64,000 bases of DNA from Octopus sinensis (GCF_006345805.1 NC_043010.1:58590001-58654000); one strand, 5' to 3'; counted from the stretch's first letter, positions 531 through 33,877 are shown. Translations and numbers: made by a program. Notes: generated from the sequence alone by a model not told the origin.

Positions 531-2951
531 CAATATTGTATTGGGTGGACTCTTCTCCAGGGTACCCACGTTTGACCAATCAATCTGAGACTCATACTGC
601 GGGTAGAAATCTTCCTTACATTCCACAAATGGCATGTTTCTATTATTCATCTCTGAAGAGTACCTCACTGGGGTACCAGGAATACTGCTGCTCTGACACG
701 GTAAAGGTTGATCAATTCTGTTACATATAGCTGACCTATTAACACCTTTCCTAGTGCTCTTGGCAGAGCGAGACTGACCACTGCTACATTTCACAATACA
801 CAGTGTGATCGACACTACAATCACCACAGCTACTATTACAGCTGCTACTACAAGGATAATCAATAATGGTACGTCCAGTGTTCTGTTCTTCTCTAAGTGG
901 ACAGTCGGCATCGGTGCTGATGTCTTGTTAGTGACCCTTAATGACAAAGACACAGTAGTTGTGGCTGACAACACTGGGCTTCCAGAATCCTTGACCACAA
1001 GCACCAGTGCGTATGAGCCAGCATCGTTGAGATGAGGTGCACGCGAGAAAGACATTTGACCAGTTAAAGAGTTGAGTGTAAACAAGCGTTTATTGTTACC
1101 GTCAAGTATTCCATATTTGAGGAACGCATTTAAATGACTGTCTCTGTCAGACGCTCTAATCACAGTGATGGCATTGGTACTTTGCGGGTGGTAGTGGACA
1201 TTGATATGGAAAGGGTCAGTTGTAGGGTAGATGAAATACGGATTATTGTCGTTTCTGTCTAAAACCTCAACAACAACATTCGCTGTGTTATTCAACGACG
1301 GTTTACCATTGTCTTTGACAAAAACCTCAAACTTATACATGTCTTCTTCTTCTCTGTCCAATGGTATGTTGCTGGTAATAAAACCATAATCACTCACCTG
1401 GAACGGTATGTTATTTCTGTCTTTACTCAACAGTGAGAACGTCAGTTGACCAGCACTTGCCAGGTCTGGGTCAGTGGCATTGATAAAACCTATAGGAAAG
1501 TTTGCTTTACCATTCTCATAGGTGAGGAAGTGGAATGTATCTTTGGTAAATTGCGGTTGCACATCATTCACATCCATTACTTGGATTGAGATCTTTCTCT
1601 CCGTCTTTAAAGCAGGGCTTCCATTGTCTTCACACACAATTCTCATGTTGAAATGGTCTAATGTTTCTCTGTCAAGTGGTTTCTTCAGAGTAATCTTGTA
1701 TTCCTTTGATCCTAAATGTGAGAGGACAACTTTATCATGTTCTAATTTACAACTCACTTCTCCATTCGCTCCAAAATCATTGTCCACCACATTCACATAA
1801 GCAAGAAAACTGCCCACTTTAGTTCCTTCGTAAATCGCTGCAGTGTCCTTCTTCAATTCAGACACAAAATTGATCCCTATTTTGGGAGGATGGTTCTTTT
1901 CATTGAGAATATTCACTCGTACAATGGCAAAGGAATTTAAAGAAGGATTCCCTCCATCTTTCGCCTCCACATACATCTTGAGAATATTCTTTGTTTGTGA
2001 TAATGGTTTTTCTACAAATAATTCCCCAGTTTGTTGGTTCAGTCTGAAATGTCTTCTTGTACGTTCTGGTGTTTCCGGACTAAAGAAATAAGACACTTTA
2101 CCATTGTTGCCAGAATCTGGGTCTTTTGCAGACAATGTCAAAATGGGGTTGTTGTTAGGATGTGTATTTTTGATGGAAATATTGTAAATATGTTTTGAAA
2201 AAATCGGTGAGTTATCATTCACATCAATTATTTTTATATGAACATGTAAAATTCCTTCTTTTGAAGGCTGCCCTCCATCATTAGCTATCACTTCTAGATT
2301 GTAACTATCTTTGATTTCTCTGTCTAGTTTTTCTCCAAGAATAATTCCTATCTTTGCTCTTCCTGTGATGGTTTTTCTCACAGACAATATAAATGGATCA
2401 CTAAATTGTTTCTTCAATTTATATGTAATTTCTGAATTTTCCATTCCAACATCTTTGTCAAAGGCATCTGGAATTAATCTTTCGGCTCCTTCTCCATCAC
2501 GTTCATCAAATGTAATATTCAGTTGTGTCTGAGCAAACTCAGGGCTGTGATCATTAATGTCTTCTATAATAACCTGAATTTTAATAATTTTCAAAAATGT
2601 CTTCCTTCTACGTACAGCAACTTTGATGTATCTAACACACTCTGATTCATATGTACACAGTTTCTCAGCATCCAATGTTTGAGCCGTGTACAATTTACCA
2701 TCTTGTGTGACGTTGAATAAATGTGAATTCTCTGTCCATTGCTGTTGCATTTGGTTGTATGTGATGAAATTATTTCCCACAAGAGAGTCCGTTTCTTCCA
2801 TCTGTGTGTCAGCAGCAATATCCCCAACAAAAGTAAAGGGACTGCTTTCTTCTTCTACATGATAGCTCAGATCTACACAGACACAACTGTGTAGTAATAG
2901 ATTGAGGACATTTGCAAGTAAGTATGTATTCCACACACAGCCTACTTCCAT
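531..2951 (-). CDS. Protocadherin A, main coding exon (807 codons: signal peptide, EC1-EC6, TM, cytoplasmic tail)
   Basis: ORF track 516..2954. The first true ATG is at 2951 (the track's first codon is GTG). Cadherin motifs DINDHSPEF, LDRE, DVNDNSP, DxD; EC1 Cys-X5-Cys (CTYESEC) typical of protocadherins; TM LLIILVVAAVIVAVVIVVSITLCIV. Acceptor TTTCAG| at 2984; phase-0 donor TTG|GTAAGT at 531/530. Confidence 0.96.
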
Positions 2952-3633
2952 CACAGAATGTTAAATCATATCTCGTTAGTTTATCTGAAATTACAGAAGA
3001 AAATTTTTATTGAAAAATTTCACTGAATGTTTGAGATTTTAAAAAGAATTTTTTGTTGAAATTGTTAAAAATTTCATGTCAATTATGGTAAAGCTGAAAG
3101 AAAGGAGTGAACATTTATGACATGTCTTCGTGTATGTCGTGGCATTATTCACTAAATTGTTTTCTATCAAGAGAACCCTTGTAGATATTACAGATGATGC
3201 AGTTTTACTTAGTAGAAAGAAAATGGTACATGCTTGTAAAGTTGGATATAAATCCAGTGATTTATATCCACCAAGAGCGTGGCAATTGTGTATTTGATAA
3301 GAATTTCAGACTTCTTCGAAGTAGTCTTAAATATCTCCTTAAGCGTGGAGATACTGAAAATAAATACGGGAGGTAACTGCATATATTGTGGGGCAATGTT
3401 TGATTGTCTCCCTTATGTAAGGAATGCACTGGGGAGAAATTTTTAAAACATGGAATGGTCTGAAATTTCTTGTCACAATTGCATATTTTCTTTAAAGTAT
3501 AGATATCTCAATCTCTTTTCCACTAACTAGTCTTTCCATGAATTGACAGAATTATTGTTATTTAACTATAGAAGCATTAACATCAATTCTTTTATTCAAC
3601 ATCAAAATTCAGGGATGATAGTGATGCTACCTA

Positions 3634-3670
<37 letters not shown>

Positions 3671-3904
3671 ATATATATATCTTTCTAATTAGTAATTACT
3701 TACTCAAACCTCAAATAATTTTATCAAAGTTAACTTCAGCTTAACATCAGACACTGTTTTTTCATTAAAAGAAAACTTTCATCCCAAAGTGATCATCTCA
3801 ACAGGCTGCTGCTGCTGTTGCTTCCTCTTCTTCTTCTCCCCCACTCCCTTATTCTGTGTGTCTCTGTGTAGAGGTACTCATTATACAAATATAAGTTAAG
3901 CATT

Positions 3905-4480
3905 AACAGGCTAAAGAAGGTCTTCACCCACGTATGGTGTTGTTATCTGTTTGATGGGATATGAAAGGTTTAGTCCACTTTGAACTTTTAACTCCTAAAC
4001 CAAATGATAACAAAGGAGATCCACTGTGAGCAGCTTGAATGGCTTAAGCCAATGCTAGAAGAAAAATGACTGTCTCTGGTTTCGAGAAGAAAGGTGTTCT
4101 TCCATCAGGATAATGCTTGGCCACAGACAGTGAGGATGACATTCCAAAGGCTGGAGCAGTTTGAATGGGAAACGATGCCCCACCCACCATATTCACTGGA
4201 CATTGCCCCATTTGATTATCATTTATTCCGCAATCTTCAAAATCACTTGGATGGAAAAAATATGAATTCTATAGACGAGGTCAAAACAAAACTGGAGGAG
4301 TATTTTTCATCATGGACAAGTGAATTTTGGAAGAGGAGTCTTGCAAGTCTCCCAGACAGAAGGAAGAGCATTGTAGAAAATGAAAGAGAGAATATTTTAG
4401 ATTAAAAAGAACTTCGTTTATCTTAATTTTGAAAAATAAGAGAAGTATAAATAAAACACAATATTTATGAGATGTCAAAA
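3905..4480 (+). mobile_element. Mariner transposase 3' fragment in intron 1 of gene A
   Basis: ORF 4094..4405 has FHQDNAWPQT and YSLDIAPFDYHLF, matching the mariner HDNARPH and YSPDLAPSDYHLF motifs. Absent from the homologous intron in B, C and D. Ends are approximate. Confidence 0.88.
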
Positions 4481-6015
4481 TATGTTAGCATGATATTATG
4501 TGACATATGTCTGAATATCACATTGAATAATATTCTAACCACATTTGAAATTAATTAATCTAGATGTCAAATGAAAATTAAGATTTCTTTCCAGGAAATA
4601 GATACATTTAAAACTGTATTGAACAATCAAGGTAAAATAATTCTGGATGATTTCTCAATAAAATCCTTTACAGAAATCAGAAAACCTTACCGAAAGTAGG
4701 AATGCTTCAACATCCAAATTAAAAGATTGGATTTCTTCAAGTTAATAACTTAAAGTCATCCCATTTTGGTGAGAACAGAAGAATCTGTCAGTTGTCCCCT
4801 GTATCCAATAGCAACAGAACTGGGCCTCAGTGTTTTGGTCCCTTCCACTGGAAACGACCCTAAAGTATATTGAATTATAACAACAATATTATATTCCATA
4901 TCAAACAAATAAGAGAGAGAAAGACAGAGAGGAGAAGAGACAGACAGATAGACACACAGACAGACAAACAGACAGAGAGACGGATGGTCAGAGCGATGGA
5001 TATTCAAACAGACAGATATAGTTTTGATAGATATAGATTTATAACAATTCTTATGTACCATGATGTTTATATGAGAGATGAATGACATTCATGCAGAGTG
5101 TTCTGTATATATATATATATATGAGTGTATGTATGTATGTATGTATGCATAATAGGATATATATGTTTGTGTGTTTATGCATGTGTGTAAATATATATCT
5201 ATATATATATATCTATATATATATATATATATAACAACAAAAATGTTATATCTTGGACACAGAGTTACCCAATGTTTTGCATCCACAAAGCAAAGCCTTG
5301 TGGACATCCCGTCAGACTCTATACAAATACAAAATCTAAAATCTCTGCATTGCAGTTGTGAGCAAATGCTCAGAAGTCGAGGCTTTGTAGATGTGAAACC
5401 TTGGGTTACTCCATGTCCAACTTATAAAACTTTTCTTGTAATAATTACTGCTCTATTCTTTAGACTATGCTTCTTTCTGATTTATGTCATTTTAGACGTC
5501 TCCCTGACATAGTTTATGAGGGTTTAGCATATACACTTACTGCTAAACATTATATACTGTAAATATGCAGTTATAGACAGTTTTGTATGTCATATAGACT
5601 GCAGGAAATACATAGAAGTCTCACTGATAGAAATATATAGAAAATATATACACTTTTATTATACATTAAACTGTAAATATTCTCCCTATCCTACGGAATA
5701 TTCTACATCTTTACACTGTTCAATACACAATAAACTCTAAATACACAATTTGCGTTATGTAAATCCATAATTAGAGAAATATGAACATGACTGTATATAA
5801 GAAATTTGATCATCGAAGATAAACGAGAAAAAAAGGCTTCAACAAGCAAGATTTCTCATCATTATATAGCCATGTTTAAAAATATATACACCAGTGATTA
5901 TACACAAATTAACAATATATAACATATTGCTCATGCTGAAATGTGAATATATACACTGTACAATATCTTAAACAATAAATACTGACAGAACCAAACACAG
6001 ATATATATATATATA

Positions 6016-6179: not shown

Positions 6180-6223
<44 letters not shown>

Positions 6224-7089
6224 ATTATATATATTTACACAAGACAATTAATCACCAAATGACTCTGTATCACAGCAAAATGTCTGCTGCTATTCACAAT
6301 ATACAACAATGTGTCCAACAAATGGCTATCATTATTAATATTATTATTATTTTCAATATTACTAATCCACACACACCACAGAAGAAAAAAAAGATCCACT
6401 TGTATTTCTATGTCTTGTTGTCTTCACTTTGACACTAAAATATATTTTCCACAACAAATTGCTCACACAATCCCTCAAACAACCATGTCTGACATCAGAA
6501 CGATATCTGCTACTCTGTGATTATAGATTCATTATGAAGACCTCCTTCGTTAAATCGTTTCTATAAATGCTTTTAGAACATCATTTATACATTGTGATAT
6601 GATAAAATGAATAGAGAAATATTAAGTAAGAAATATTTCTGGGAATATAATGATATATTGTTAGAGTGTCTGCAGGAAATCTACAAATGAAATAATCTGG
6701 CTAAAGAGAAGAGACAGAATGTTGTGAAGACAAAATGGAGATTTCCTGTGAGAAATGAGATTTAGTGAGACAAACTTTGCATCTAATTTCACCGAACCAA
6801 CAACATAGGAGACTAAAACAATAACAATTATTATAAACTCTATCAATATAGAACCAGAATATTTGTGAGATGACACTGGATTATTAAATAATCTAATAAT
6901 AATAATAATAATAATAGTTAGTATTTTGCCCAGTGAAGTTGTATGTTGTGAGTAAAACATTTGCTGATATTTGTGAGTGATATAAGGGTGTTTCTCTGAA
7001 TGTCCCTTTGTTTTCTCTGTCTCTTATATATTTTCACATGATATTAAAGAGGAAAGATGGGAAATGAAAGAAGATAGATGTAGACTTAC

Positions 7090-7325
7090 CTCCATTGTCT
7101 CATCCATAATCAGTGTGGCAGTGTGTGAGGGAGTGTCTAGTGGTGTGTCACTCTGTGTGTGTGTGTGTGGTAGTAGAGATGTGGATCTCAGGCTGTAACT
7201 ACTGCTGCTGTTGTTTCTGCTGCTGTAGTCTGCTGCACACACACACACACACACACTGCTTCTACACACATACTGCAGTGATGTGTGTGTGTCATAAGAG
7301 CTGTGTATAGACTGTGTGCTGTGTA
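7090..7325 (-). other. Putative 5' leader exon of gene A
   Basis: Block conserved in all four units, ending in a strong donor GAG|GTAAGT (7090/7089). The 5' end is estimated as ~30 nt downstream of a TATAAA. Confidence 0.7.
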
Positions 7326-7351
7326 AATATACACAGTTTGTAGTTCTATGG

Positions 7352-7357
7352 TTTATA
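7352..7357 (-). promoter_or_regulatory. TATA-like box upstream of the leader exon (also at 17278-17283 and 26466-26471; absent from unit D)
   Basis: GACTATAAACC on the minus strand at the same position in units A, B and C. The genome is AT-rich, so specificity is low. Confidence 0.4.
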
Positions 7358-7597
7358 GTCTAACAATGGAGTGTTGCAACGATGTGTGATGTGTAGTAAC
7401 TCTATCGGTTGTGTTGGGACACAAGTTAATGTGTTGTTGTATATAGATATACAATAGAGGATACGTTTATCGTTTGTTTAAAAACATGATTGTATGTAAA
7501 TATTTATGTATATTTATGTATGGTTGCATGTGGCTAGTGTTTATTCTCCCTACCTGCCAGATTGTCAGACTGTTTTACTTTTTGCTACCCTCTAAGA

Positions 7598-7657
<60 letters not shown>

Positions 7658-7859: not shown

Positions 7860-7860
7860 C

Positions 7861-7907
<47 letters not shown>

Positions 7908-7913
7908 TGTATA

Positions 7914-8525: not shown

Positions 8526-9008
8526 TACATGGAGTTGTATCCATAGCTGTACATATAACTGTATGTATGCACATTAATGTGTGTGTGTGTGTGTGTGTGT
8601 AAATATTTATATATAGAGAGAGAGGTGGGGAGATGTGAACCTTAGAGAGAAGACAGCAAAGGAATGCAACAAATTGTGTGATATAGAGTTGAATGGGTTC
8701 AAGCCTAGCTAGGAATGTATAGGAAAAACTGGATATTAGCACAGGGATAAAGTGTGTTTGTGTATACACATAGGGTGAAAATTTGTATGAATGTGTTAAT
8801 GTGTCTTTCTGTGTGTGCATTGATGTAATGTGTGTAGGTGTGTGTATACAAGTACAGTCTTATGTGTGTCTGTGTTTGTGATTCTTGTGTGTGCTGTTAA
8901 GAATGTGTCCATCAAATATTCCACTATGGTAAGATGGTAAGATCCTCACAGAATATTCCAGAGTCTGTCTGTGTAACAATATCTTTTTTCCTTGGCAGAA
9001 ATGTGGTT

Positions 9009-9032
9009 TTATTTTTTAATTCTTGTTGGTAA
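9009..9032 (-). CDS. Putative terminal coding exon of gene B (LPTRIKK*)
   Basis: Strong acceptor ctctttctctctttctttctccattccag| at 9032. Phase 0 matches the upstream donor and gives TTA CCA ACA AGA ATT AAA AAA TAA. The same block follows genes C and D. Confidence 0.6.
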   Translation of the reverse strand, partial: LPTRIKK

Positions 9033-10159
9033 CTGGAATGGAGAAAGAAAGAGAGAAAGAGTTTAACAGAACATTGATTAAAGTATGTCACCTCAAATGT
9101 ATGCCAGACAATATATCTGACAGCTTTCATGGTGACCCAATGTATTAGAGGCCTTTGTCTTGTCTTTAAAGTACATCGGTTGGAGGGGGCCTTCTTCAGA
9201 AGTTCCAGTTCTGAGAAGTGTGGGACACTTTCTTAGCCTCTATTGTTACCAGATCTGCTCTGACCCCAGGTAGTAGCACCCACTGAAATTTTAGCATTTC
9301 ATGGAATGGCATCGAGATAATTTACAGACATCATAACAAGCCCAGGGCAGATGAAACCCTTCAGCTTTTTAGCAGGTCGTCTAAGAGAAGGTAAATCCAG
9401 ACAAATCCTGCATCCTGCTAACTACTGGACCCCTGGATTTTGTTACATCAGATCAATACAAGTTTGGAGGACAGGAGAATGGGACGGGCTCTGCACAAAC
9501 CATGCACACAATAACAATAACACCCTGGTGCATTGTGGGGTGATTTATTGATCCTTTAAACATGGCTAAGAGAGTAAACCCCTACAAAACATCCAGAGGG
9601 AGGGACACTAAGGCACTTATATACAAATATACCAAAAGCTGGCATCCACTTTGGTTCCATTGATGCAGCAAATTTATTGACATGTCTGTTCTTCATAGCT
9701 GGCATCGATGAGTGGATAGGTGAGAAATATGGTTCGGACAAGACGCATTTTATTCTGGAAACAGCTGATGCGCAGAAGAGGTGGCTACTCACTTCAGAAT
9801 ACCGTTGACCAATAATGAAAATATTGTAGTTACGTGTGAGCTATGTAAGACTATATATCTGACCAATCTATGGCATGGATTCTGTGTAATCAAACGTATG
9901 ACTGGGAATATATCTGATCAAAATATTCACCAATGTATGACATATCATGTTTGACCAAAGAATTGGCAAGCAGCATATCAGCCCATTGTATGACAGACAT
10001 TATGACGGACCAATGTATGACACAGATTATAGAAACAATCTTACGCTCCCTTTTCCCTACTCATGTTCAACATGACCATAAACACCAATCCCACTAACAT
10101 TTAATAAATGAAGGGACTTCACACTATGTGATGGTCCCTTATCTTTCATGTTTCACTAG

Positions 10160-17144: not shown

Positions 17145-17183
<39 letters not shown>

Positions 17184-18844: not shown

Positions 18845-19295
18845 CTGGAATGGAGAAAGAAAGAGAGAAAGAGTTTAACAGAACATTGAATCAAGTATGT
18901 CACCTCAAATGTATGCCAGACAATATATCTGACAGCTATCATGGTGACCCAATATATTAGAGGCCTTTAAAGTGCATCGGTTGGAGGGGGCCTTCTTCAG
19001 AAGTTCCAGTTTTGAGAAGTGTGGGACTATTTCTTAGCCTCTATTGCTACCAGATCTACTTTGACCCCAGGTAGTAGCACCCACCTAACTCATGGTCATG
19101 GGTTAATTAGCATTTCATGGAATGGCATCGAGATAATTTACAGACATCATAACAAGCCCAGGGCAGATGAAACCCTTCAACTCTTTAGCAGGTCGTCTAA
19201 GAGAAGGTAAATCCAGATAAATCCTGCTAAGTACTGGGCTCATGCGATTTGTTTCACCAGATCAAGACACAAAGATACACACTCATTAATATATA

Positions 19296-20870: not shown

Positions 20871-23293
20871 CAATATTGTATTGGGTGGACTCTTCTCCAG
20901 GGTACCCACGTTTGACCAATCAATCTGAGACTCATACTGCGGGTAGAAATCTTCCTTACATTCCACAAATGGCATGTTTCTATTATTCATCTCTGAAGAG
21001 TACCTCACTGGGGTACCAGGAATACTGCTGCTCTGACACGGTAAAGGTTGATCAATTCTGTTACATATAGCTGACCTATTAACACCTTTCCTAGCGTTCT
21101 TGGCAGAGCGAGACTGACCACTGCTACATTTCACAATACACAGTGTGATCGACACTACAATCACCACAGCTACTATTACAGCTGCTACTACAAGGATAAT
21201 CAATAATGGTACGTCCAGTGTTCTGTTCTTCTCTAAGTGGACAGTCGGCATCGGTGCTGATGTCTTGTTAGTGACCCTTAATGACAAAGACACAGTAGTT
21301 GTGGCTGACAACACTGGGCTTCCAGAATCCTTGACCACAAGCACCAGTTCGTATGAGCCAGCATCATTGAGATGAGGTGCACGCGAGAAAGACATTTGAC
21401 CAGTTAAAGAGTTGAGTGTAAACAAGCGTTTATTGTTACCGTCAAGTATTCCATATTTGAGGAACGCATTTAAATGACTGTCGCTGTCAGACGCTCTAAT
21501 CACAGTGATGGCATTGGTACTTTGCGGGTGGTAGTGGACATTGATATGGAAAGGGTCAGTTGTAGGGTAGATGAAATACGGATTATTGTCGTTTCTGTCT
21601 AAAACCTCAACAACAACATTCGCTGTGTTATTCAACGACGGTTTACCATTGTCTTTGACAAAAACCTCAAACTTATACATGTCTTCTTCTTCTCTGTCCA
21701 ATGGTATGTTGCTGGTAATAAAACCATAATCACTCACCTGGAACGGTATGTTATTTCTGTCTTTACTCAACAGTGAGAACGTCAGTTGACCAGCACTTGC
21801 CAGGTCTGGGTCAGTGGCATTGATAAAACCTATAGGAAAGTTTGCTTTACCATTCTCATAGGTGAGGAAGTGGAATGTATCTTTGGTAAATTGCGGTTGC
21901 ACATCATTCACATCCATTACTTGGATTGAGATCTTTCTCTCCATCTTTAAAGCAGGGCTTCCATTGTCTTCACACACAATTCTCATGTTAAAATGGTCTA
22001 ATGTTTCTCTGTCAAGTGGTTTCTTCAGAGTAATCTTGTATTCCTTTGATCCTAAATGTGAGAGGACAACTTTATCATGTTCTAATTTACAACTCACTTC
22101 TCCATTTGCTCCAAATCATTGTCCACCACATTCACATAAGCTAGATAACTGCCCACTTTAGTTCCTTCATAAATAGCTGCAGTGTCCTTCTTCAATTCAG
22201 ACACAAAATTGATCCCTATTTTGGGGGGATGGTTCTTTTCATTGAGAATATTCACCCGTACAATGGCAAAGGAATTTAAAGAAGGATTCCCACCATCTTT
22301 CGCCTCCACATACATCTTGAGAATATTCTTTGTTTGTGATGTTAATGGTTTTTCTACAAATAATTCCCCAGTTTGTTGGTTCAGTCTGAAATACTGTCTT
22401 GTGCGTTCTGGTGTTTTTGAACTAAAAAAATAAGACACTTTACCATTATTGCCAGAATCTGGGTCTTTTGCAGACAATGTCAAAATAGGGTTGTTGTTAG
22501 GATGTGTATTTTTGATGGAAATATTGTAAATATGTTGTGAAAAAACTGGTGAGTTATCATTCACATCAATTATTTTTATATGAACATGTAAAATTCCTTG
22601 TTTCGAAGGTTGTCCTCCATCATTAGCTATCACTTCTAGATTGTAACTATCTTGTATTTCTCTGTCTAGTTTGTCTCCAAGAATAATTCCTATCTTTGCC
22701 CCTCCAGTGATAGTTTTCCTCACAGACAATATAAATGGATCGCTAAATTGTTTCTTTAATTTATATGTAATTTCAGAGTTTTCCATTCCAACATCTTTGT
22801 CAAAGGCATCTGGAATTAATTCTTCAGCACCTTCTCCATCACGCTCATCAAATGTCATATTTATTTCTTTTTGAGGAAACTCAGGGCTGTGATCATTAAT
22901 GTCTTCTATAATTACTTTAATTTTAATAACTTTCAAAAATGTCTTCCTTCTATGTACAGCAACTTTGATGTATCTAACACATTCTGATTCGTATGTACAC
23001 AGTTTCTCAGCATCCAATGTTTGAGCCGTGTACAATTTACCATCTTGTGTGACATTGAATAAATGTGAATTCTCTGTCCATTGCTGTTGCATTTGGTTGT
23101 ATGTGATGAAGTTATTTCCCACAAGAGAGTCCGTTTCTTCCATCTGTGTGTCAGCAGCAATATCCCCAACAAAAGTAAAGGGACTGCTTTCTTCTTCTAC
23201 ATGATAGCTCAGATCTACACAGACACAACTGTGTAGTAATAGATTGAGGACATTTGCAAGTAAGTATGTATTCCACACACAGCCTACTTCCAT
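20871..23293 (-). pseudogene. Protocadherin C with a single 1-nt frameshift (recent pseudogene or assembly error)
   Basis: Split ORFs 22094..23296 and 20697..22097. The ATG-to-donor span is 2423 nt versus 2424 in B and D. ccaaatc at ~22111-22117 corresponds to ccaaaatc in the other copies. No other stop or frameshift; splice sites intact (23326, 20871). Confidence 0.9.
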
Positions 23294-24839
23294 CACAGAA
23301 TGTTAAATCATATCTCGTGAGCTTATCTGAAATTACAGAAGAAAATAGAATATTTTTATTGAAAAATTTCACTGAAATTTTGAGGTTTTGGAAAGAATCT
23401 TCCGTCGAAATTGTTTAAAATTTCAAAACTATTATGGGAGACTTGAAAGAAAGGTGTTAATATTTATGGGACATTAAGTTTAGTTCAAAGTTTCCCGAAT
23501 TTAAGTGTTTTTACCCTAAATTCTCATCTATGAAGAGAAGGGATATTTATTCTTGGTTTGTTAAAAGAAAGTGGAAATAGGGTATTTGACAAGAATTTCT
23601 GACATTTTCGAAGTAGTCTTGAATACTTCCTTAAAGTAAAGTTAGACAAAATAGTAACGGGAGGTAACTGCATTTATGGTGCGTAGAATGTTTTATTATC
23701 TCCCTTATTTTAGCTTCAGAGTTGGAGACTTGGAATATTATAGTCAGAAATTTCTTGTCTCCATTGGATATTTTCTTTAAAATGTTGATATCGTCATCTT
23801 TTTCTGCTCACTAGCTTTTCCATGAAGTAACAGAACTGCGGATATTTAACCGTAGGGACATTGCAAGCTATCCTTTCATTCTTCATTCAGCATCAAAATT
23901 CGGTGATGATGGTTACCTATCTCTCTCTCGCTCTCTCTCTCCATATATATATATATATATATATATATCACTATTTATCTATCTATTCTATCTATCTATC
24001 TATTTCATTATTAATTACCCACTCAAATTCTCAGATAATTTTATCAGACAATAAATGTTATCAAAATTATTGGATCTTAATCATTCACATCTTCAAATTA
24101 ACAACAGCTAGTTTTTTAATTAAAACAAAACCTTCATCCCTAAAGGATCGTAGCCACAGGCTTCTCCTTCTTCTTCTCTCTCTCCCTCTCTCCCTCTGTC
24201 TTTCACTGATTCCATGTGTCTATCTTTTCATTTATGTGTCTCCTTGTAAAGGTACTCATATATAAGTGCAAGTTAACCCTTAAATAGGCCCCTTTTACTC
24301 TCTTACAGATGAAAAAAGTGTCATAAATTTATTTATAATATATTAACAACAGTTATAATTAATTAATCTAGATTTCAAAGGAAAATTAAGATCTCATTTC
24401 AGAAACTAAATACATTTAAAACTGTATTGAACAATAATGTTCTATATAACAAATCCTTTAAAGAAATCAGAAAACCTTACCAAAAGTAGGAATTCTTCAA
24501 CATCCAAATTAAAAGACAGGATTTCTTCAAGTTAATAACTTAAAGTCATCCCATTTTGGTGAGAACAGAGTTGGGCTTCAGTGTTTTGGTCCCTTCCGTT
24601 GGAAATGGCCCTAAAATATATTGAAATATAACATCAATACTGTATTCCATGTTATAGAAATAAGAATGTGTGTGTGTGTGCATGTGAGAAAGAACGCAAG
24701 AAGGGAGAGAGAGAGAGAGTGAAAGACAGACAGACAGACAAGTGTAGTTTTAGCAGATACAGATTTATAACAATTCTTATGAACCATTATACTTCTATGA
24801 GAGATGAATCACATTCATTGAGAATGTTCTGTGTGTATG

Positions 24840-25299: not shown

Positions 25300-25354
<55 letters not shown>

Positions 25355-26205
25355 CCACAAGAAATTTAATCACCAATGACTCTGTATCACAGCAAAATGT
25401 CTGCTGCTATTCACAATATACAACAATGTGTCTAACGAATGGCTATCATTATTAATATTATTATTATTTTGAACATTACTAATCCACACACACCACAGAA
25501 AAAAAAGATCCACTTGTATTTCTATGTCTTGTTGTCTTCACTTTGACACTAAAATATATTTTCCACAATAAATTGCTCACACAATCCCTCAAACAACCAT
25601 GTCTGACATCAGAACGATATCTGCTACTCTGTGATTATAGATTCATTATGAAGACCTCCTTCGTTAAATCGTTTCTATAAATGCTTTTAGAACATCATTT
25701 ATACATTGTGATATGATAAAATGAATAGAGAAATATTAAGTAAGAAATATTTCTGGGAATATAATGATATATTGTTAGAGTGTCTGCAGGAAATCTACAA
25801 ATGAAATAATCTGGCTAAAGAGAAGAGACGGAATGTTGTGAAGACAAAATGGAGATTTCCTGTGATAAATGAGATTTAGTGAGACAAACTTTGCATCTAA
25901 TTTCACCGAACCAACAACATAGGAGACTAAAACAATAACAATTATTATAAACTCTATCAATATAGAACCAGAATATTTGTGAGATGACACTGGATTATTA
26001 AATAATCTAATAATAATAATAATAATAATAGTTAGTATTTTGCCCAGTGAAGTTGTATGTTGTGAGTAAAACATTTGCTGATATTTGTGAGTGATATAAG
26101 GGTGTTTCTCTGAATGTCCCTTTGGTTTTCTCTTGTCTCTTATATATTTTCACATGATATTAAAGAGGAAAGATGGGAAATGAAAGAAGATAGATGTAGA
26201 CTTAC

Positions 26206-26440
26206 CTCCATTGTCTCATCCATAATCAGTGTGGCAGTGTGTGAGGGAGTGTCTAGTGGTGTGTCACTCTGTGTGTGTGTGTGGTAGTAGAGATGTGGAT
26301 CTCAGGCTGTAACTACTGCTGCTGTTGTTTCTGCTGCTGTAGTCTGCTGCACACACACACACACACACACTGCTTCTACACATATACTGCAGTGATGTGT
26401 GTGTGTCATAAGAGCTGTGTATAGACTGTGTGCTGTGTAA
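26206..26440 (-). other. Putative 5' leader exon of gene C
   Basis: Homologous block; donor GAG|GTAAGT at 26206/26205. Confidence 0.7.
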
Positions 26441-27962
26441 ATATACACAGTTTGTAGTTCTATGGTTTATAGTCTAACAATGGAGTGTTGTGTAATGCTG
26501 GTGTATTGTAACGATGTGTGATGTGTAGTAACTCTATCGGTTGTGTTGGGAAACGAGTTAGTGTGTTGTTGTATTTAGATATACAATAGAGGATACGTAT
26601 ATGTTGTGTTTAAAAACTTGATTGTATGTAAATATTTATATATGTATATTTATGTATGGTTGCATGTGGCTAGTCTTTAGTCACCTGCCTGATGGTTTGT
26701 CTCTCTTTTTACCTCTTGGCTTCCCTCTGACAGATTATACTTTATACACACACACACATACTATATCTGTATACAGATATATATGAATATATATATTATC
26801 ATATCTATATATATATATGTGTGTGTGTTTGTGTGTATAGATATATATACATACATATATGTATGTATATATATTTATGTGTGTGTGTCTGTGTGTGTGT
26901 ATAGATATATATATATATATATATATATCATCATCATCAGCTAACAGCCTGTGATAACTATATCGTATGCTTTGATGAATTATTAGACTATCAGAATTTT
27001 TATCAGCATTTAAGTAGGGGATATTGTGAGAGACTGGTTTTGGGGGATAGCTGGGCATTGGTTTTTGTGTCTCAACACCCACCAATTGAATGAAGCACAA
27101 TCAATTGTAGACGAGTGTGTCCTGAGTGCATTGTAGCCAGAAGAAAACTACAGTAAAAGAAGGTCAGGGTTCTTTTATCCCTGCTGGCAACAAAAGTAAT
27201 CTCACTGCAAATGATGTGTAGATTGCTTGTTAGTCTTGTATTACAAAAAACAAGTACTGCTTAGCAATAAGACAAAGGTATTGAATGTTGAACATTCAGA
27301 TGTAGAAGTTGGTAAGAAAGGAAGCAAGTAATCCCCACTTTCTTGTGTAATTTTGGTGAGTATTGAGCAAGAAGAGAGAGATTAGATGAAAGGAAACCTG
27401 GCTAAAGGAATATCAGGTGTAGTACAGAAACGGGGAGTTAGGGGCTAGGTGTTTAGTAGAAATGACATGGGTGTGGTTGTGTAGATCTGAGATGTAAATG
27501 GATGGTTGCAGTTGAGTAAGGATGTCGTTGGAGGAACTGGAAGGAGTCTGGGGGAGAGGAAATCCAAGAGAGACAGAGGGAGATGGGAACCTTAGAGAGA
27601 AGACAGCAAAGGAACGCAACAAATTGTGTGATATAGAGTTGAATGGGTTCAAGCCTAGCTGGGAATGTATAGGAAAAACTGGATATTAGCATGGGGATAA
27701 AGTGTGTTTGTGTGTGTATACACATAGGGTGAAAATTTGTATGAATGTGTTAATGTGTCTTTCTGTGTGTGCATTGATGTAATGTGTGTAGGTGTGTGTG
27801 TACTACTACAGTCTTATGTGTGTCTGTGTTTGTGATTCTAGTGTGTGCTGTTAAGAATGTGTCCATCAAATATTCCACTATGGTAAGATGGTAAGATCCT
27901 CACAGAATATTCCAGAGTCTGTCTGTGTAACAATATCTTTTTTCCTTGGCAGAAATGTGGTT

Positions 27963-27986
27963 TTACTTTTTAATTCTTGTTGGTAA
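27963..27986 (-). CDS. Putative terminal coding exon of gene D (LPTRIKK*)
   Basis: Same acceptor. Its one substitution (AAA to AAG) is synonymous in the phase-0 frame. Confidence 0.6.
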   Translation of the reverse strand, partial: LPTRIKK

Positions 27987-28617
27987 CTGGAATGGAGAAA
28001 GAAAGAGAGAAAGAGTTTAACAGAACATTGAATCAAGTATGTCACCTCAAATGTATGCCAGACAATATATCTGACAGCTTTCATGGTGACCCAATGTATT
28101 AGAGGCCTTTGTCTTGTCTTGAAAGTACATCGGTTAGAGGGGGCCTTCTTCAGAAGTTCCAGTTTTGAGAAGTGTGGGACTATTTCTTAGCCTCTATTGT
28201 TACCAGATCTACTCTGACCCCAGGTAGTAGCACCCACCTAAATTTTGATCATGGGTTAATTAGCATTTCATGGAATGGCATCGAGATAATTTACAGACAT
28301 CATAACAAGCCCAGGGCAGATGAAACCCTTCAGCTCTTTAGCAGGTCGTCTAAGAGAAGGTAAATCCAGATAAATCCTGCTAACTACTGGGCTCATGCGA
28401 TTTGTTTCACCAGATCAAGACACAAAGATGCACACATATTAATATATACATACATATAAAAGGGGGCTTCTCTCAGTTTCTTTCAACCAAATCTACTCAC
28501 AAGTCTTTGGTCGACTCAAGTCTATAGTAGTAGATAGTTCTCCAAGGTGACATGCAATGGATGTAGTGGCTGTGGTGGTGGTGTTAATGAGGTGTTTTTT
28601 TGTAAAATTATACTTAC

Positions 28618-31041
28618 CAATATTGTATTGGGTGGACTCTTTTCCAAGGAACCCACGTTTGACCAATCAATCTGAGACTCATACTGCGGGTAGAAATCTT
28701 CCTTACATTCCACAAATGGCATGTTTCTATTATTCATCTCTGAAGAGTACCTCACTGGGGTACCAGGAATACTGCTGCTCTGACACGGTAATGGTTGATC
28801 AATTCTGTTACATATAGCTGACCTATTAACACCTTTCCTAGTGTTCTTGGCAGAGCGAGACTGACCACTGCTACATTTCACAATACACAGTGTGATCGAC
28901 ACTACAATCACCACAGCTACTATTACAGCTGCTACTACAAGGATAATCAATAATGGTACGTCCAGTGTTCTGTTCTTCTCTAAGTGGACAGTCGGCATCG
29001 GTGCTGATGTCTTGTTAGTGACCCTTAATGACAAAGACACAGTAGTTGTGGCTGACAACACTGGGCTTCCAGAATCCTTGACCACAAGCACCAGTTCGTA
29101 TGAGCCAGCATCATTGAGATGAGGTGCACGCGAGAAAGACATTTGACCAGTTAAAGAGTTGAGTGTAAACAAGCGTTTATTGTTACCGTCAAGTATTCCA
29201 TATTTGAGGAACGCATTTAAATGACTGTCTCTGTCAGACGCTCTAATCACAGTGATGGCATTGGTACTTTGCGGGTGGTAGTGGACATTGATATGGAAAG
29301 GGTCAGTTGTAGGGTAGATGAAATACGGATTATTGTCGTTTCTGTCTAAAACCTCAACAACAACATTCGCTGTGTTATTCAACGACGGTTTACCATTGTC
29401 TTTGACAAAAACCTCAAACTTATACATGTCTTCTTCTTCTCTGTCCAATGGTATGTTGCTGGTAATAAAACCATAATCACTCACCTGGAACGGTATGTTA
29501 TTTCTGTCTTTACTCAACAGTGAGAACGTCAATTGACCAGCACTTGCCAGGTCTGGGTCAGTGGCATTGATAAAACCTATAGGAAAGTTTGCTTTACCAT
29601 TCTCATAGGTGAGGAAGTGGAATGTATCTTTGGTAAATTGCGGTTGCACATCATTCACATCCATTACTTGGATTGAGATCTTTCTCTCCGTCTTCAAAGC
29701 AGGGCTTCCATTGTCTTCACACACAATTCTCATGTTAAAATGGTCTAATTTTTCTCTGTCAAGTGGTTTCTTCAGAGTAATCTTGTATTCCTTTGATCCT
29801 AAATGTGAGAGGACAACTTTATCATGTTCTAATTTACAACTCACTTCTCCATTTGCTCCAAAATCATTGTCCACCACATTCACATAAGCAAGATAACTGC
29901 CCACTTTAGTTCCTTCGTAAATAGCTGCAGTGTCCTTCTTCAATTCAGACACAAAATTGATCCCTATTTTGGGGGGATGGTTCTTTTCATTGAGAATATT
30001 CACCCGTACAATGGCAAAGGAATTTAAGGATGGATTCCCACCATCTTTGGCCTCCACATACATCTTGAGAATATTCTTTGTTTGTGATGTTAATGGTTTT
30101 TCTACAAATAATTCCCCAGTCTGTTGGTTCAGTCTGAAATGTCTTCTTGTGCGTTCTGGTGTTTTTGAACTCATAAAATAAGACACTTTACCATTATTGC
30201 CAGAATCTGGGTCTTTTGCAGACAATGTCAAAATAGGGTTGTTGTTAGGATGTGTATTTTTGATGGAAATATTGTAAATATGTTTTGAAAAAACTGGTGA
30301 GTTATCATTCACATCAATTATTTTTATATGAACATGTAGAATTCCTTGTTTTGAAGGTTGTCCTCCATCATTAGCTATCACTTCTAGATTGTAACTATCT
30401 TGTATTTCTCTGTCTAGTTTGTCTCCAAGAACAATTCCTATCTTTGCCCCTCCAGTGATAGTTTTCCTCACAGACAATATAAATGGATCACTAAATTGTT
30501 TCTTCAATTTGTATGTAACTTCTGAGTTTTCCATTCCAACATCTTTGTCGAAGGCTTCGGGAATTAATCTTTCGGCTCCTTCTCCATCATCTTCATCATA
30601 TGTAATATTCAGTTGTGTCTGAGGAAACTCAGGGCTGTGATCGTTAATGTCTTCTATAATTACTTTAATTTTAATAATTTTCAAAAATGTCTTCCTTCTA
30701 TGTACAGCAACTTTGATGTATCTAACACACTCTGATTCATATGTACACAGTTTCTCAGCATCCAATGTTTGAGCCGTGTACAATTTACCATCTTGTGTGA
30801 CATTGAATAAATGTGAATTCTCTGTCCATTGCTGTTGCATTTGGTTGTATGTGATGAAGTTATTTCCCACAAGAGAGTCCGTTTCTTCCATCTGTGTGTC
30901 AGCAGCAATATCCCCAACAAAAGTAAAGGGACTGCTTTCTTCTTCTACATGATAGCTCAGATCTACACAGACACAACTGTGTAGTAATAGATTGAGGACA
31001 TTTGCAAGTAAGTATGTATTCCACACACAGCCTACTTCCAT
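28618..31041 (-). CDS. Protocadherin D, main coding exon (808 codons)
   Basis: ORF track 28522..31044; ATG 31041, acceptor 31074, donor TTG|GTAAGT at 28618/28617. Confidence 0.96.
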
Positions 31042-31669
31042 CACAGAATGTTAAATCATATCTTGTGAGTTTATCTGAAATTAAAGAAGAAAATAGAATA
31101 TTTTTATTGAAATATTTCACTGAAATTTTGAGGTTTTGGAAAGAATCTTTTGTTGAAATTGTTTAAAATTTCAAAACTTTTATGGGAGATATGAAAGAAA
31201 GGTGTTAATATTTATGGGACATTAAGTTTAGTTCAAAGTTTCTTTATTTTAAGTGTTTCGTACCCTAAATTCTCTTCTATCAAGAGAAGGGATATTTATT
31301 CTTGGTTTGTTAAAAGAAAGTGTGAAATAGGGTATTTGACAAGAATTTCTGACATTTTCGAAGTAGTCTTGAATACTTCCTTAAAGTAAAGTTAGACAAA
31401 ATAGTAACGGGAGGTAACTGCATTTATGGTGCGTAGAATGTTTTATTATCTCCCTTATTTTAGCTTCAGAGTTGGAGACTTGGAATATTATAGTCAGAAA
31501 TTTCTTGTCTCCATTGGATATTTTCTTTAAAATGTTGATATCGTCATCTTTTTCTGCTCACTAGCTTTTCCATGAAGTAACAGAACTGCGGATATTTAAC
31601 TGTAGGGACATTGCAAGCTATCCTTTCATTTTTCATTCAGCATCAAAATTCGATGATGATGGTTACCTA

Positions 31670-31748
<79 letters not shown>

Positions 31749-32236
31749 GTTATTCCGTGCATCTATCTTTTCTTTGTAAAGGTACTCATATATAAGTGCA
31801 AGTTAACCCTTAAATAGGCCCCTTTTACTCTCTTACAGATGAAAAAAGTGTCATAAATTTATTTATAATATATTAACAACAGTTATAATTAATTAATCTA
31901 GACTTGAAAGGAAAATTAAGATCTCATTTCAGAAACTAAATACATTTAAAACTGTATTGAACAATAATGTTCTATATAACAAATCTTTTACAGAAATCAG
32001 AAAACCTTACCAAAAGTAGGAATTCTTCAATATCCAAATTAAAAGACAGGATTTCTTCAAGTTAATAACTTAAAGTCATCCCATTTTGGTGAGAACAGAG
32101 TTGGGCTTCAGTGTTTTGGTCCCTTCCGTTGGAAATGGTCCTAAAATATATTGAAATATAACAACGATACTGTATTCCATGTTATAGAAATAAGAATGTG
32201 TGTGTGTGCATGTGAGAAAGAGCGAGAGAAGGGAAG

Positions 32237-32276
<40 letters not shown>

Positions 32277-33719
32277 CAGACAGACAAACAGACAAGTGTA
32301 GTTTTGGCAGATACAGATTTATAACAATTCTTATGAACCATTATACTTATATGAGAGATGAATCACATTCATTGAGAATGTTCTGTGTGTATGTATGTAT
32401 ATATATATATATATATATATGTATATTTATATATGTATGTGTGTGTATTTATATAGTTAGTCGTCTCACAGATATAGTTTTGGAGAATTAATGTATACAC
32501 TCACTTCTAAACATTATACACAGTAAATATACATTCTGTACGGCAGACTCTTCAACAAATTTACAAATTTCAATAGAGAATAACTCCAAACATACACTTT
32601 TTGATTCACAAACGAATATATAATTAGTGAAAGATAATGACGAGTGTATATAAGAAATTGAAGAACAACAGAAAGAAAAGGTTCAACAAGCAAGATTTCT
32701 CATCATTATATAGCCATGTTTAAAAATATATACACCAGTGATTATAAACTAAATTAACAATATACAACATATTGCTCATGCTGAAATGTTAATATATACA
32801 CTGTACAATATCTTAAACAATAAATACTGACAGAACCAAACACAGATATATATATATATATATATATATATATTTCCACAAGAAATTTAATCACCAAATG
32901 ACTCTGTATCACAGCAAAATGTCTGCTGCTATTCACAATATACAACAATGTGTCTAACGAATGGCTATTATTATTAATATTATTATTATTTTGAACATTA
33001 CTAATCCACACACACCACAGAAAAAAAAGATCCACTTGTATTTCTATGTCTTGTTGTCTTCACTTTGACACTAAAATATATTTTCCACAACAAATTGCTC
33101 ACACAATCCCTCAAACAACCATGTCTGACATCAGAACGATATCTGCTACTCTGTGATTATAGATTCATTATGAAGACCTCCTTCGTTAAATCGTTTCTAT
33201 AAATGCTTTTAGAACATCATTTATACATTGTGATATGATAAAATGAATAGAGAAATATTAAGTAAGAAATATTTCTGGGAATATAATGATATATTGTTAG
33301 AGTGTCTGCAGGAAATCTACAAATGAAATAATCTGGCTAAAGAGAAGAGACGGAATGTTGTGAAGACAAAATGGAGATTTCCTGAGAAATGAGATTTAGT
33401 GAGACAAACTTTGCATCTAATTTCACCTAACCAACAACATAGGAGACTAAAACAATAACAATTATTATAAACTCTATCAATATAGAACCAGAATATTTGT
33501 GAGATGACACTGGATTGTTAAATAATCTAATAATAATTATAATAGTTAGTATTTTGCCCAGTGAAGTTGTATGTTGTGAGTAAAACATTTGCTGATATTT
33601 GTGAGTGATATAAGGGTGTTTCCCTGAATGTCCCTTTGGTTTTCTCTTGTCTCTTATATATTTTCACATGATATTAAAGAGGAAAGATGGGAAATGAAAG
33701 AAGATAGATGTAGACTTAC

Positions 33720-33877
33720 CTCCATTGTCTCATCCATAATCAGTGTGACAGTGTGTGAGGGAGTGTCTAGTGGTGTGTCACTCTGTGTGTGTGCGTGTGT
33801 GGTAGTAGAGATGTGGATCTCAGGCTGTAACTACTGCTGCTGTTGTTTCTGCTGCTGTAGTCTGCTGCACACACACA
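33720..33877 (-). other. Leader exon of gene D; homology to the other units ends at the (CA)n tract
   Basis: Donor GAG|GTAAGT at 33720/33719. Beyond ctgctgcacacacaca the sequence no longer matches A, B or C. Confidence 0.7.

What the first reader, a model, noticed from the sequence alone, without database searches (positions are those of the whole stretch)
531..33877. Very recent tandem array of self-contained protocadherin genes
Seen: four same-strand units, each with its own leader exon and coding exon, and a terminal-exon block following B, C and D (A's would be off-window). Known: vertebrate clustered Pcdh-alpha/gamma splice variable exons to shared constant exons, and coleoid cephalopods expanded protocadherins independently. 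Inference: this is an actively expanding neuronal-identity cluster in which diversity is built from whole genes. The strong donor after each coding exon still leaves room for splicing to a shared downstream exon left of the window.
Basis: partly seen in the sequence, partly recalled or inferred. Interest (0 to 1): 0.7.

Follow-up and report, generated by a model that had tools for sequence, protein, structure and literature searches.

The report
Octopus tandem protocadherin gene array
The window holds the first four units of a head-to-tail array of at least ten complete protocadherin genes in Octopus sinensis, a kind of cluster already described for octopuses, and the copies look young mainly because their back halves are kept nearly identical by sequence exchange between copies.

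Summary
There are four minus-strand units (period 7.7-10.7 kb). Each has a 2.45-kb exon encoding the signal peptide, six cadherin repeats, the membrane span and the cytoplasmic tail. B, C and D each have their own 7-codon terminal exon (LPTRIKK*). Each unit also has a conserved upstream block with a candidate leader exon.

The window is Octopus sinensis chromosome CM016872.1. The same genes lie in the same order in O. vulgaris, and Argonauta has a related array. At least six more units lie beyond the window's left edge.

Diversity is built from whole genes, not from variable exons spliced to shared constant exons. This is already published (Albertin 2015 and 2022, Styfhals 2019, Jiang 2022). 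"Very recent" and "actively expanding" are not supported:
- Positional orthologues exist in O. vulgaris.
- Synonymous divergence is 0.14 in EC1-EC4 (0.20 in EC2) but 0.02 from EC5 to the tail.
- Two N-terminal types shared with Argonauta carry species-identical C-terminal halves.

The array is therefore an old, mosaic family under concerted evolution. Copy C has a 1-nt frameshift. A neuronal recognition function is inferred from homology only.

The parts
531..2984 (-). Unit A large exon. 5'UTR 2984-2952, ATG at 2951, last codon TTG 533-531, donor GTAAGT 530-525. 807 codons, intact, with a one-codon deletion relative to B-D.
   Evidence: Pfam hits. The C-terminal 480 aa match XP_036364983.1 exactly.
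4691..4860 (-). Unit A candidate leader (5'UTR) exon 'x2'. It ends in the donor CTTTCG|GTAAGG and begins after the conserved CAATATACTTTAG|G, which could be either an acceptor or a TATA-like element.
   Evidence: About 70% conserved with Argonauta.
6183..7647 (-). Unit A upstream conserved block 'x1'. It includes the 20-nt mini-exon 6812-6793 used by an O. vulgaris gene model. It may be promoter or first-exon territory.
8615..9460 (-). Unit B terminal block. The coding part of the terminal exon is 9032-9009 (LPTRIKK*), and AATAAA overlaps the stop.
11191..13647 (-). Unit B large exon (ATG at 13614), 808 codons, intact. It is the most divergent of the four in EC1-EC4.
15212..15342 (-). Unit B candidate leader exon x2.
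16129..17540 (-). Unit B upstream conserved block x1 (mini-exon 16720-16701).
18415..19227 (-). Unit C terminal block. The coding part of the terminal exon is 18844-18821.
20871..23326 (-). Unit C large exon (ATG at 23293). It is interrupted by a 1-nt deletion in a T-run at 22115-22113, causing a frameshift after codon ~392. It is either a pseudogene or an assembly error.
   Evidence: The O. vulgaris orthologue is intact at this site.
24481..24611 (-). Unit C candidate leader exon x2.
25302..26784 (-). Unit C upstream conserved block x1 (mini-exon 25926-25907).
27567..28422 (-). Unit D terminal block. The coding part of the terminal exon is 27986-27963. The intron is only ~630 nt.
   Evidence: The O. 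vulgaris orthologue has the same structure.
28618..31074 (-). Unit D large exon (ATG at 31041), 808 codons, intact. It is the first gene of the array in the direction of transcription.
32011..32141 (-). Unit D candidate leader exon x2.
32846..33877 (-). Unit D upstream conserved block x1 (mini-exon 33446-33427). Position 33877 is the upstream edge of the whole array.

Best explanation
What it is. Window 531-33877 is the upstream end of a head-to-tail sub-array of complete six-cadherin-repeat protocadherin genes on Octopus sinensis chromosome CM016872.1. The array has at least 10 units in O. sinensis and about 12 in O. vulgaris.

How each unit is built. Each unit is a self-contained transcription unit:
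- an upstream block with a short non-coding leader exon;
- one 2.45-kb exon that encodes everything from the signal peptide to almost the end of the cytoplasmic tail;
- a private terminal exon that adds seven residues and the stop.

How it evolves. The family is not a fresh burst of duplicates. It evolves as a mosaic:
- Repeated gene conversion or unequal exchange homogenises the 5' end (5'UTR plus the first ~45 codons), the 3' half (EC5, EC6, membrane span, tail), the terminal exon and much of the flanks.
- The segment from mid-EC1 to EC4 keeps older differences, and these are themselves reshuffled in patches. In vertebrate protocadherins this segment carries trans-recognition specificity.
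- The result is a set of proteins with variable recognition heads on a constant stalk and tail. This resembles the vertebrate variable/constant design, but it is reached by concerted evolution of whole genes rather than by splicing to shared exons.

Shown: the gene anatomy, the species, orthology, the divergence pattern and the mosaicism.
Inferred: the leader exon, one promoter per unit, homophilic adhesion and a neuronal role.
For: Anatomy.

Identity and species:
- Pfam Cadherin_2 plus 5 Cadherin domains.
- The best solved relatives are full delta-2 and gamma-B4 protocadherin ectodomains.
- 99% identity to O. vulgaris CAI9733532.
- Exact matches to O. sinensis XP_036364983/4.

Array size:
- Consecutive models CAI9733532-544.
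- A chained 4660-aa O. sinensis model.
- Six more large exons plus a fragment in the neighbouring 108 kb. Four of these are type I, each with its own x1, x2 and acceptor, and three have a recognisable terminal exon.

Age: collinearity with O. vulgaris and N-part identity of 99-100% for D/532, C/533a and A/535.

Concerted evolution:
- pS is 0.141 in the N half against 0.021 in the C half among the window copies. The split holds in O. vulgaris (0.128 / 0.025) and in Argonauta (0.079 / 0.013). Octopus-Argonauta pS is 0.50 / 0.36, so C-half synonymous sites are free to change.
- Type-I and type-II copies are 72-77% identical in the N part but 97-99% in the C part. Argonauta P0002 and P0003 are 72% against 100%. 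Octopus versus Argonauta C parts are only 84-86%.

Mosaicism: blocks of sites support AD|BC, then AC|BD, then AB|CD. 37% of site pairs fail the four-gamete test. A PHI-like permutation test gave 0 of 1000.

Literature: cephalopods use full gene duplication, not shared final exons, with homogenisation by gene conversion suggested (PMC9068888; PMC6339937; PMC9795677).
Against: - No transcript evidence was available. The leader exon, the promoters and the exclusive use of each unit's own terminal exon are unproven.
- Two public gene models chain neighbouring units together (1571 aa and 4660 aa). Read-through or inter-unit splicing therefore cannot be excluded.
- Copy number and order differ between the two Octopus assemblies. 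One extra unit lies between C and B in O. vulgaris. This could be real turnover or assembly collapse.
- Identity between positional orthologues is only 93-96% for A and B, so orthology there is blurred.
- No codon window gave pN/pS above 1 on meaningful counts. The maximum was about 0.5, at codons 121-165. Selection for diversity is therefore inferred from retention, not demonstrated.
Confidence: 0.85

Rival explanations
1. One reading: a burst of very recent whole-unit duplications that is still expanding, with similarity reflecting age alone.
For: Overall exon identity is 96-97.5% and flank identity 92-97%. Copy number differs between the O. sinensis and O. vulgaris assemblies. A published estimate puts a second octopod PCDH expansion at 8-14 Ma (PMC9795677).
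Against: There is a seven-fold difference in synonymous divergence between the two halves of one exon. EC2 pS of 0.20-0.29 exceeds flank divergence. Positional orthologues are present in O. vulgaris. Type-I and type-II N-termini are shared with Argonauta yet carry species-identical C halves. Site patterns are incompatible along the exon.
Confidence: 0.07
2. Vertebrate-like usage: the large exons act as alternative variable exons that are spliced, at least in part, to exons of downstream units or to a distal shared exon.
For: Each large exon ends in a consensus donor. All terminal exons encode the same peptide, so cross-unit splicing would be invisible in the protein. The chained RefSeq and ENA models join units.
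Against: Every unit has its own acceptor-bearing terminal exon 0.6-2.2 kb away. The membrane span and tail are inside the large exon. The chained models need artefacts to stay in frame, such as splicing out the signal peptide. The published conclusion is that cephalopods do not use shared final exons (PMC9068888).
Confidence: 0.08
3. The units are an assembly artefact: haplotypes or collapsed or duplicated repeats placed in tandem.
For: The array is repetitive. Copy C has a homopolymer indel typical of long-read errors. Unit number differs between assemblies.
Against: The four exons differ at about 4% of sites, with copy-specific patches. That is far above the 1.4-2% seen between species in unique flanks. 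The same units lie in the same order in an independent assembly of O. vulgaris. Argonauta has an analogous array.
Confidence: 0.02
4. The near-identity of the 3' half reflects strong purifying selection or a local mutational cold spot, not sequence exchange.
For: pN is also very low there (0.005). EC5, EC6, the membrane span and the tail may be functionally constrained.
Against: Synonymous sites are equally flat (pS 0.02), while the same sites differ by 0.36 between Octopus and Argonauta. The non-coding terminal blocks and the 5'UTR are homogenised too. Type-I and type-II copies share the C half within species but not between genera.
Confidence: 0.05

Closest known systems
Cephalopod tandem protocadherin sub-arrays (Albertin et al. 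2015; Albertin et al. 2022, PMC9068888; Styfhals et al. 2019, PMC6339937; Jiang et al. 2022, PMC9795677, which maps O. sinensis chromosome 14 clusters)
   Same: Closely related, multi-exonic, complete genes in head-to-tail orientation on one chromosome. Diversity comes from full gene duplication. Similarity is attributed to recent duplication and/or gene conversion. The genes of this window are already in RefSeq and ENA.
   Different: Nothing differs in kind. This report adds a domain-resolved picture for one sub-array: EC1-EC4 variable, signal peptide and EC5-to-tail homogenised, and two N-terminal types older than the Octopus-Argonauta split. It also implies that whole-gene distances under-date the duplications.
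Vertebrate clustered protocadherins (Pcdh alpha/beta/gamma)
   Same: Six cadherin repeats encoded with the membrane span in one large exon, arranged as a tandem same-strand array. A variable recognition part sits on a constant remainder. Gene conversion homogenises parts of the ectodomain while EC2-EC3 stay diverse (Noonan et al. 2004, cited in PMC6339937). The beta cluster likewise lacks constant exons.
   Different: In alpha and gamma clusters the constant cytoplasmic part comes from three shared exons joined by cis-splicing. Here each gene has its own tail and terminal exon. The expansion is independent of the vertebrate one. Stochastic promoter choice and the CTCF-bound conserved promoter element are not known or tested here.
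Vertebrate delta-2 non-clustered protocadherins (PCDH10/17/18/19)
   Same: These are the best sequence matches among solved structures across all six repeats (6vg1 E 4e-86, 6vg4 E 7e-79). They are stand-alone multi-exon genes.
   Different: The delta-2 genes are dispersed single genes with long conserved cytoplasmic motifs (CM1/CM2). Published work found no such motifs in octopus protocadherins (PMC6339937). The tail here is about 90 residues.

Membership tests
Protocadherin (six-repeat, single-pass cadherin superfamily member) | N-terminal signal peptide followed by six extracellular cadherin repeats | tested here: met
   Pfam Cadherin_2 (residues 29-114) plus five Cadherin stretches, E 1e-66 to 1e-68. 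Alignment to full six-repeat ectodomains 6vg1, 6vg4 and 6e6b over residues 28-671.
Protocadherin (six-repeat, single-pass cadherin superfamily member) | Single transmembrane segment and a cytoplasmic tail lacking the classical cadherin catenin-binding domain | tested here: met
   One hydrophobic run, VPLLIILVVAAVIVAVVIVVSITLCIV, followed by a tail of ~90 residues. No cadherin cytoplasmic-domain Pfam hit.
Protocadherin (six-repeat, single-pass cadherin superfamily member) | Whole ectodomain and membrane span encoded by one large exon | tested here: met
   An uninterrupted 807-808-codon frame between a conserved acceptor and donor.
Protocadherin (six-repeat, single-pass cadherin superfamily member) | Homophilic, calcium-dependent trans binding | not testable with these tools
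   Needs cell-aggregation or biophysical assays.
Cephalopod whole-gene tandem protocadherin array | Closely related complete genes, head to tail, same orientation, in a coleoid genome | tested here: met
   Four units in the window. Six more plus a fragment in L004. The source is O. sinensis. Orthologous arrays occur in O. vulgaris and Argonauta.
Cephalopod whole-gene tandem protocadherin array | Each gene has its own 3' terminal exon rather than shared constant exons | tested here: met
   An LPTRIKK* exon with its acceptor lies downstream of B, C and D and of units in L001, L003 and L004. Which exon is actually used by transcripts was not tested.
Cephalopod whole-gene tandem protocadherin array | Each gene has its own promoter and 5' exon | tested here: inconclusive
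   There is a conserved acceptor 33 nt before the ATG in Octopus and Argonauta. Each Octopus unit has one x2 block ending in GGTAAGG and one x1 block. No transcript or TSS data exist. In Argonauta x2 is seen only before the first gene of the fetched locus.
Vertebrate-type clustered protocadherin locus (alpha/gamma design) | Variable first exons cis-spliced to shared constant exons that encode the common cytoplasmic domain | tested here: not met
   The cytoplasmic domain is inside each large exon. Private terminal exons exist. Published work says the same (PMC9068888).
Vertebrate-type clustered protocadherin locus (alpha/gamma design) | Region-specific gene conversion with diversity retained in the specificity-determining repeats | tested here: met
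   pS and identity partition. Mosaic site patterns.
Vertebrate-type clustered protocadherin locus (alpha/gamma design) | Stochastic, combinatorial promoter choice in single neurons | not testable with these tools
   Needs single-cell, isoform-resolved expression data.

The most novel reading that the evidence does not exclude
In this octopod sub-array, the functional equivalent of the vertebrate protocadherin 'constant region' is maintained by long-running, region-restricted gene conversion across whole genes. The region covers the signal peptide, EC5-EC6, the membrane span, the tail and the terminal exon. EC1-EC4 cassettes, some older than the Octopus-Argonauta split, are protected from homogenisation and are shuffled in patches.

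Two consequences follow. Published datings of octopod protocadherin expansions from whole-gene distances would be too young. The variable/constant boundary would mark the recognition/cis-interaction boundary of the protein.

I found only general mentions of gene conversion for cephalopod protocadherins and no paper combining cephalopod, protocadherin and concerted evolution.
Probability: 0.75. Interest if true: 0.45.

Novelty: already known. Interest (0 to 1): 0.25.

Why it matters
These particular genes are already annotated, so it changes little.

The useful residue has three parts:
1. In this sub-array "recent" is an illusion created by concerted evolution. This matters for anyone dating the expansions or calling lineage-specific duplications from gene trees.
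2. The sharp variable (EC1-EC4) / constant (EC5-tail) partition gives a testable prediction of where binding specificity lies in octopus protocadherins.
3. The public gene models here are poor: fused 1571-aa and 4660-aa chains, truncated models of intact genes, and a possible pseudogene. This will distort expression counts in single-cell studies of octopus brains.

Tried and rejected
- Positive selection was not found. I looked for pN/pS above 1 in 30-codon windows over 12 paralogue pairs. Only windows with three or fewer synonymous differences reached about 1. The hypervariable patch (codons 121-165) reached about 0.5. Diversifying selection is therefore not demonstrated.
- Transcript evidence for the leader exon was not available. 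No transcript assemblies of these genes turned up: the 90% cluster holds only NCBI and UniRef models, and XP_036364983 is not on record as a gene product.
- The O. vulgaris 1571-aa model gave indirect clues to small upstream exons. I reject it as a real protein, because it needs the signal peptide spliced out to stay in frame.
- Footprinting against Argonauta recovered only the coding exon, its acceptor and the x2 block of one gene. The x1 block is not conserved.
- Scans for structured RNAs and tRNAs in the window found nothing.
- I could not place the window relative to L004. The first 10 kb of L004 do not overlap the window, so at least 10 kb, possibly one more unit, separates A from the next known unit.
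- The genome contigs and metagenome collections were not used. The first holds prokaryotes only, and neither would inform an octopus locus.

Full report
**What is in the sequence**

The window has 12 ORFs of 200 codons or more. Five of them lie on the minus strand between 516 and 31044 and belong to four near-identical units. Self-BLAST and the repeat finder show three kinds of repeated block:
- coding-exon blocks (525-3119, 11185-13816, 20865-23468, 28612-31216), 95.7-97.5% identical;
- an upstream block (6183-7647, 16129-17540, 25302-26784, 32846-33877), 94-97% identical;
- a downstream block (8615-9460, 18415-19227, 27567-28422), 92-93% identical.

Start-to-start spacing is 10.66, 9.68 and 7.75 kb.

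Each ORF translates to a protein with:
- a signal peptide;
- a Cadherin_2 domain and five Cadherin domains (E 1e-66 to 1e-68);
- one hydrophobic membrane span;
- a cytoplasmic tail of about 90 residues.

The best solved relatives are complete six-repeat ectodomains of delta-2 protocadherins and protocadherin gamma-B4.

**Gene anatomy**

A DNA alignment of the four copies shows that similarity starts upstream of an invariant acceptor, ATTTCAG|ATAA, which lies 33 nt before the ATG. This acceptor is also invariant in three Argonauta copies, so an upstream non-coding exon must exist. Similarity ends immediately after a consensus donor, TTG|GTAAGT.

Exact large-exon coordinates:

| Unit | Large exon (minus strand) |
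|---|---|
| A | 2984-531 |
| B | 13647-11191 |
| C | 23326-20871 |
| D | 31074-28618 |

Annotated O. vulgaris and Argonauta proteins end in ...PPNTIL-LPTR[IL]KK. Searching for that peptide found a pyrimidine tract-CAG|TTACCAACAAGAATTAAAAARTAA exon at 9032-9009, 18844-18821 and 27986-27963. These sites lie 2.16 kb, 2.03 kb and 0.63 kb downstream of exons B, C and D. A's terminal exon is off the left edge of the window. Its O. vulgaris orthologue has it about 1.7 kb past the donor.

Two conserved upstream elements occur once per unit:
- x2 is about 130-170 nt and ends in CTTTTG|GTAAGG, 0.9-1.7 kb before the large exon. It is the only non-coding stretch, apart from the acceptor region, that is still alignable with Argonauta.
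- x1 is a 20-nt mini-exon inside the 1.4-kb upstream block.

Both elements are used in an O. vulgaris chained gene model. I take x2 as the likeliest leader exon. No transcript data were available, so this is inference.

**Source and context**

- The top database hit is O. vulgaris CAI9733532 (99% identity).
- O. sinensis XP_036364984 matches copy C exactly over more than 340 residues, and XP_036364983 matches copy A over more than 480. The window is therefore Octopus sinensis.
- The chained RefSeq model XP_036365280 places the array on CM016872.1 near 58.5 Mb.
- O. vulgaris chromosome OX597827.1 is collinear with the window: unique flank 98.6%, unit C 98.2%, units D, B and A 93-96%.
- Thirteen consecutive O. 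vulgaris models (CAI9733532-544) fall in one 90% cluster.
- The neighbouring 108 kb of O. sinensis holds six more large exons and a fragment. Four are of the same type, each with its own x1, x2 and acceptor, and three have a recognisable terminal exon.
- Argonauta hians has a 7.6-kb-period array of 817-aa orthologues.

The window therefore shows the first four genes of an array of at least ten. Position 33877 is the array's upstream edge. Beyond it lie AT microsatellites, retroelement fragments and a GC-rich satellite.

**Age and mode of evolution**

Proportions of synonymous (pS) and non-synonymous (pN) differences are as follows:

| Comparison | N half (codons 1-400), pS | C half (codons 401-808), pS |
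|---|---|---|
| Four window copies | 0.141 | 0.021 |
| O. vulgaris paralogues | 0.128 | 0.025 |
| Argonauta paralogues | 0.079 | 0.013 |
| O. sinensis-O. vulgaris positional orthologues | 0.042 | 0.019 |
| Octopus-Argonauta | 0.50 | 0.36 |

- Within the N half of the window copies, EC2 has pS 0.200, with pairwise dS of 0.20-0.29.
- Within the C half, EC5 has pS 0.016 and EC6 0.008.
- The first 45 codons have no differences at all.
- The Octopus-Argonauta value of 0.36 shows that C-half synonymous sites are not intrinsically invariant.

At protein level:
- The N part (residues 28-400) gives 99-100% for D/532, C/533a and A/535, and 90-96% between paralogues.
- The N part gives 72-77% between the MEVGCVW type and the METRETQ type found at the far end of the array.
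- The C part is 97-100% among all Octopus copies of both types.
- Argonauta P0002 and P0003 resemble the two Octopus N-terminal types respectively. They are 72% identical in the N part and 100% in the C part.
- Octopus and Argonauta C parts are 84-86% identical.

This is the classical signature of concerted evolution. The C half tracks the species, and the N half tracks the unit.

The N half is itself mosaic:
- Informative sites among A-D support AD|BC at nt 367-453, AC|BD at 454-534 and AB|CD at 595-1071.
- 37% of informative site pairs among eight Octopus copies fail the four-gamete test.
- Neighbouring sites are more compatible than in any of 1000 permutations.

No window shows pN/pS above 1 on meaningful counts. 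The most variable patch, codons 121-165 at the EC1/EC2 junction, has pN 0.10-0.14 and a ratio of about 0.5.

**Interpretation**

The array is nevertheless old:
- It predates the O. sinensis-O. vulgaris split.
- Its two head types predate the Octopus-Argonauta split.
- It is kept looking young by exchange between units.

The variable segment (mid-EC1 to EC4) coincides with the part that mediates antiparallel trans recognition in vertebrate protocadherins. The homogenised segment (EC5-EC6, membrane span, tail) coincides with the cis-interaction and signalling part. That correspondence rests on established knowledge of vertebrate proteins, not on a test here.

A shared distal exon is not needed and is unlikely. 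It cannot be excluded without cDNA, because all terminal exons encode the same peptide and two public models chain units together.

**Comparison with the literature**

- Albertin et al. [quoted passage not shown] They suggest "homogenization through gene conversion" (PMC9068888).
- Styfhals et al. [quoted passage not shown]
- Jiang et al. 2022 map tandem PCDH clusters on O. sinensis chromosome 14 and date expansions to 65 Ma and 8-14 Ma from Jukes-Cantor distances (PMC9795677).

The finding is therefore already known in kind, and the genes are already deposited. This analysis adds a domain-resolved demonstration of concerted evolution for one sub-array, and a caution that whole-gene distances under-date it. 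I found no paper combining cephalopod, protocadherin and concerted evolution.

**Verdict**

- Observation: confirmed.
- Interpretation: partly supported.
- Novelty: already known.
- Interest: low to moderate (0.25).
- Most novel surviving reading: region-restricted gene conversion acting as a substitute for constant exons. I rate it probable (0.75) and of moderate interest (0.45).

Noticed in passing
window 22113-22115 (minus strand), inside unit C large exon: The T-run has 3 bases where A, B, D and the O. vulgaris orthologue have 4. This shifts the frame after about codon 392. RefSeq models this copy as a 352-aa truncated protein. It is either a young pseudogene or a homopolymer error of the long-read assembly.
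   Followed up: partly
window 531-2951 (unit A) and L004 10001-98606: Public gene models of this array are unreliable. Intact unit A is modelled as a 489-aa N-truncated protein. Six further units are fused into one 4660-aa 'uncharacterized protein'. In O. vulgaris two units are fused into a 1571-aa model that splices out a signal peptide to stay in frame. Expression studies that count reads on these models will be affected.
   Followed up: partly
L001/L003 versus window 13.6-20.9 kb: O. vulgaris has one more unit (second half of CAI9733533) between the orthologues of C and B than the O. sinensis window. It also has about 12 units against at least 10 overall. This could be real copy-number turnover or assembly collapse.
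   Followed up: partly
L002 (Argonauta hians BAAFZT010000119.1) 600-800 versus 7100-10000 and 14700-17590: The x2 leader-like block conserved with Octopus occurs only upstream of the first Argonauta gene in the fetched locus. The next two units are 97.7-98.9% identical to each other over 7.6 kb and lack it. Their 5' exon is therefore different, or is shared with the first gene.
   Followed up: partly
one search hit list: The closest O. bimaculoides protein is only about 55% identical, while Argonauta, a more distant genus, has 82% and 74% orthologues. This sub-family may be lost, unassembled or unannotated in O. bimaculoides.
   Followed up: no
window 2951-2984 and equivalents (5'UTR part of each large exon): A two-codon upstream ORF (ATG ATT TAA) lies 11 nt before the start codon in all four Octopus copies. 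In Argonauta the corresponding ATG reads ACA, so the uORF is absent there.
   Followed up: partly
window 7863-8523, 17561-17773, 26773-26928, 34271-34419, 62928-63437: Long imperfect (AT)n microsatellites, up to 660 bp, sit between the terminal block of one unit and the upstream block of the next, and also outside the array. They could be substrates for unequal exchange.
   Followed up: no
window 58875-59871: A GC-rich (53%) tandem repeat with a 61/122/244-nt period and about 16 copies of the 61-nt unit. It creates spurious 300-380-codon ORFs on the plus strand. No Pfam or Rfam match.
   Followed up: no
window 40981-41802 (-) and 60003-61091 (-): Reverse-transcriptase fragments (RVT_1; the second also has a PHD/C1-like zinc finger). 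These are decayed retroelements in the 30 kb upstream of the array. The first is conserved at 98.6% in O. vulgaris.
   Followed up: no
window 13687-13917: A 127-nt segment just upstream of unit B's acceptor is duplicated in tandem (1.8 copies, 78% match). It is specific to this unit.
   Followed up: no
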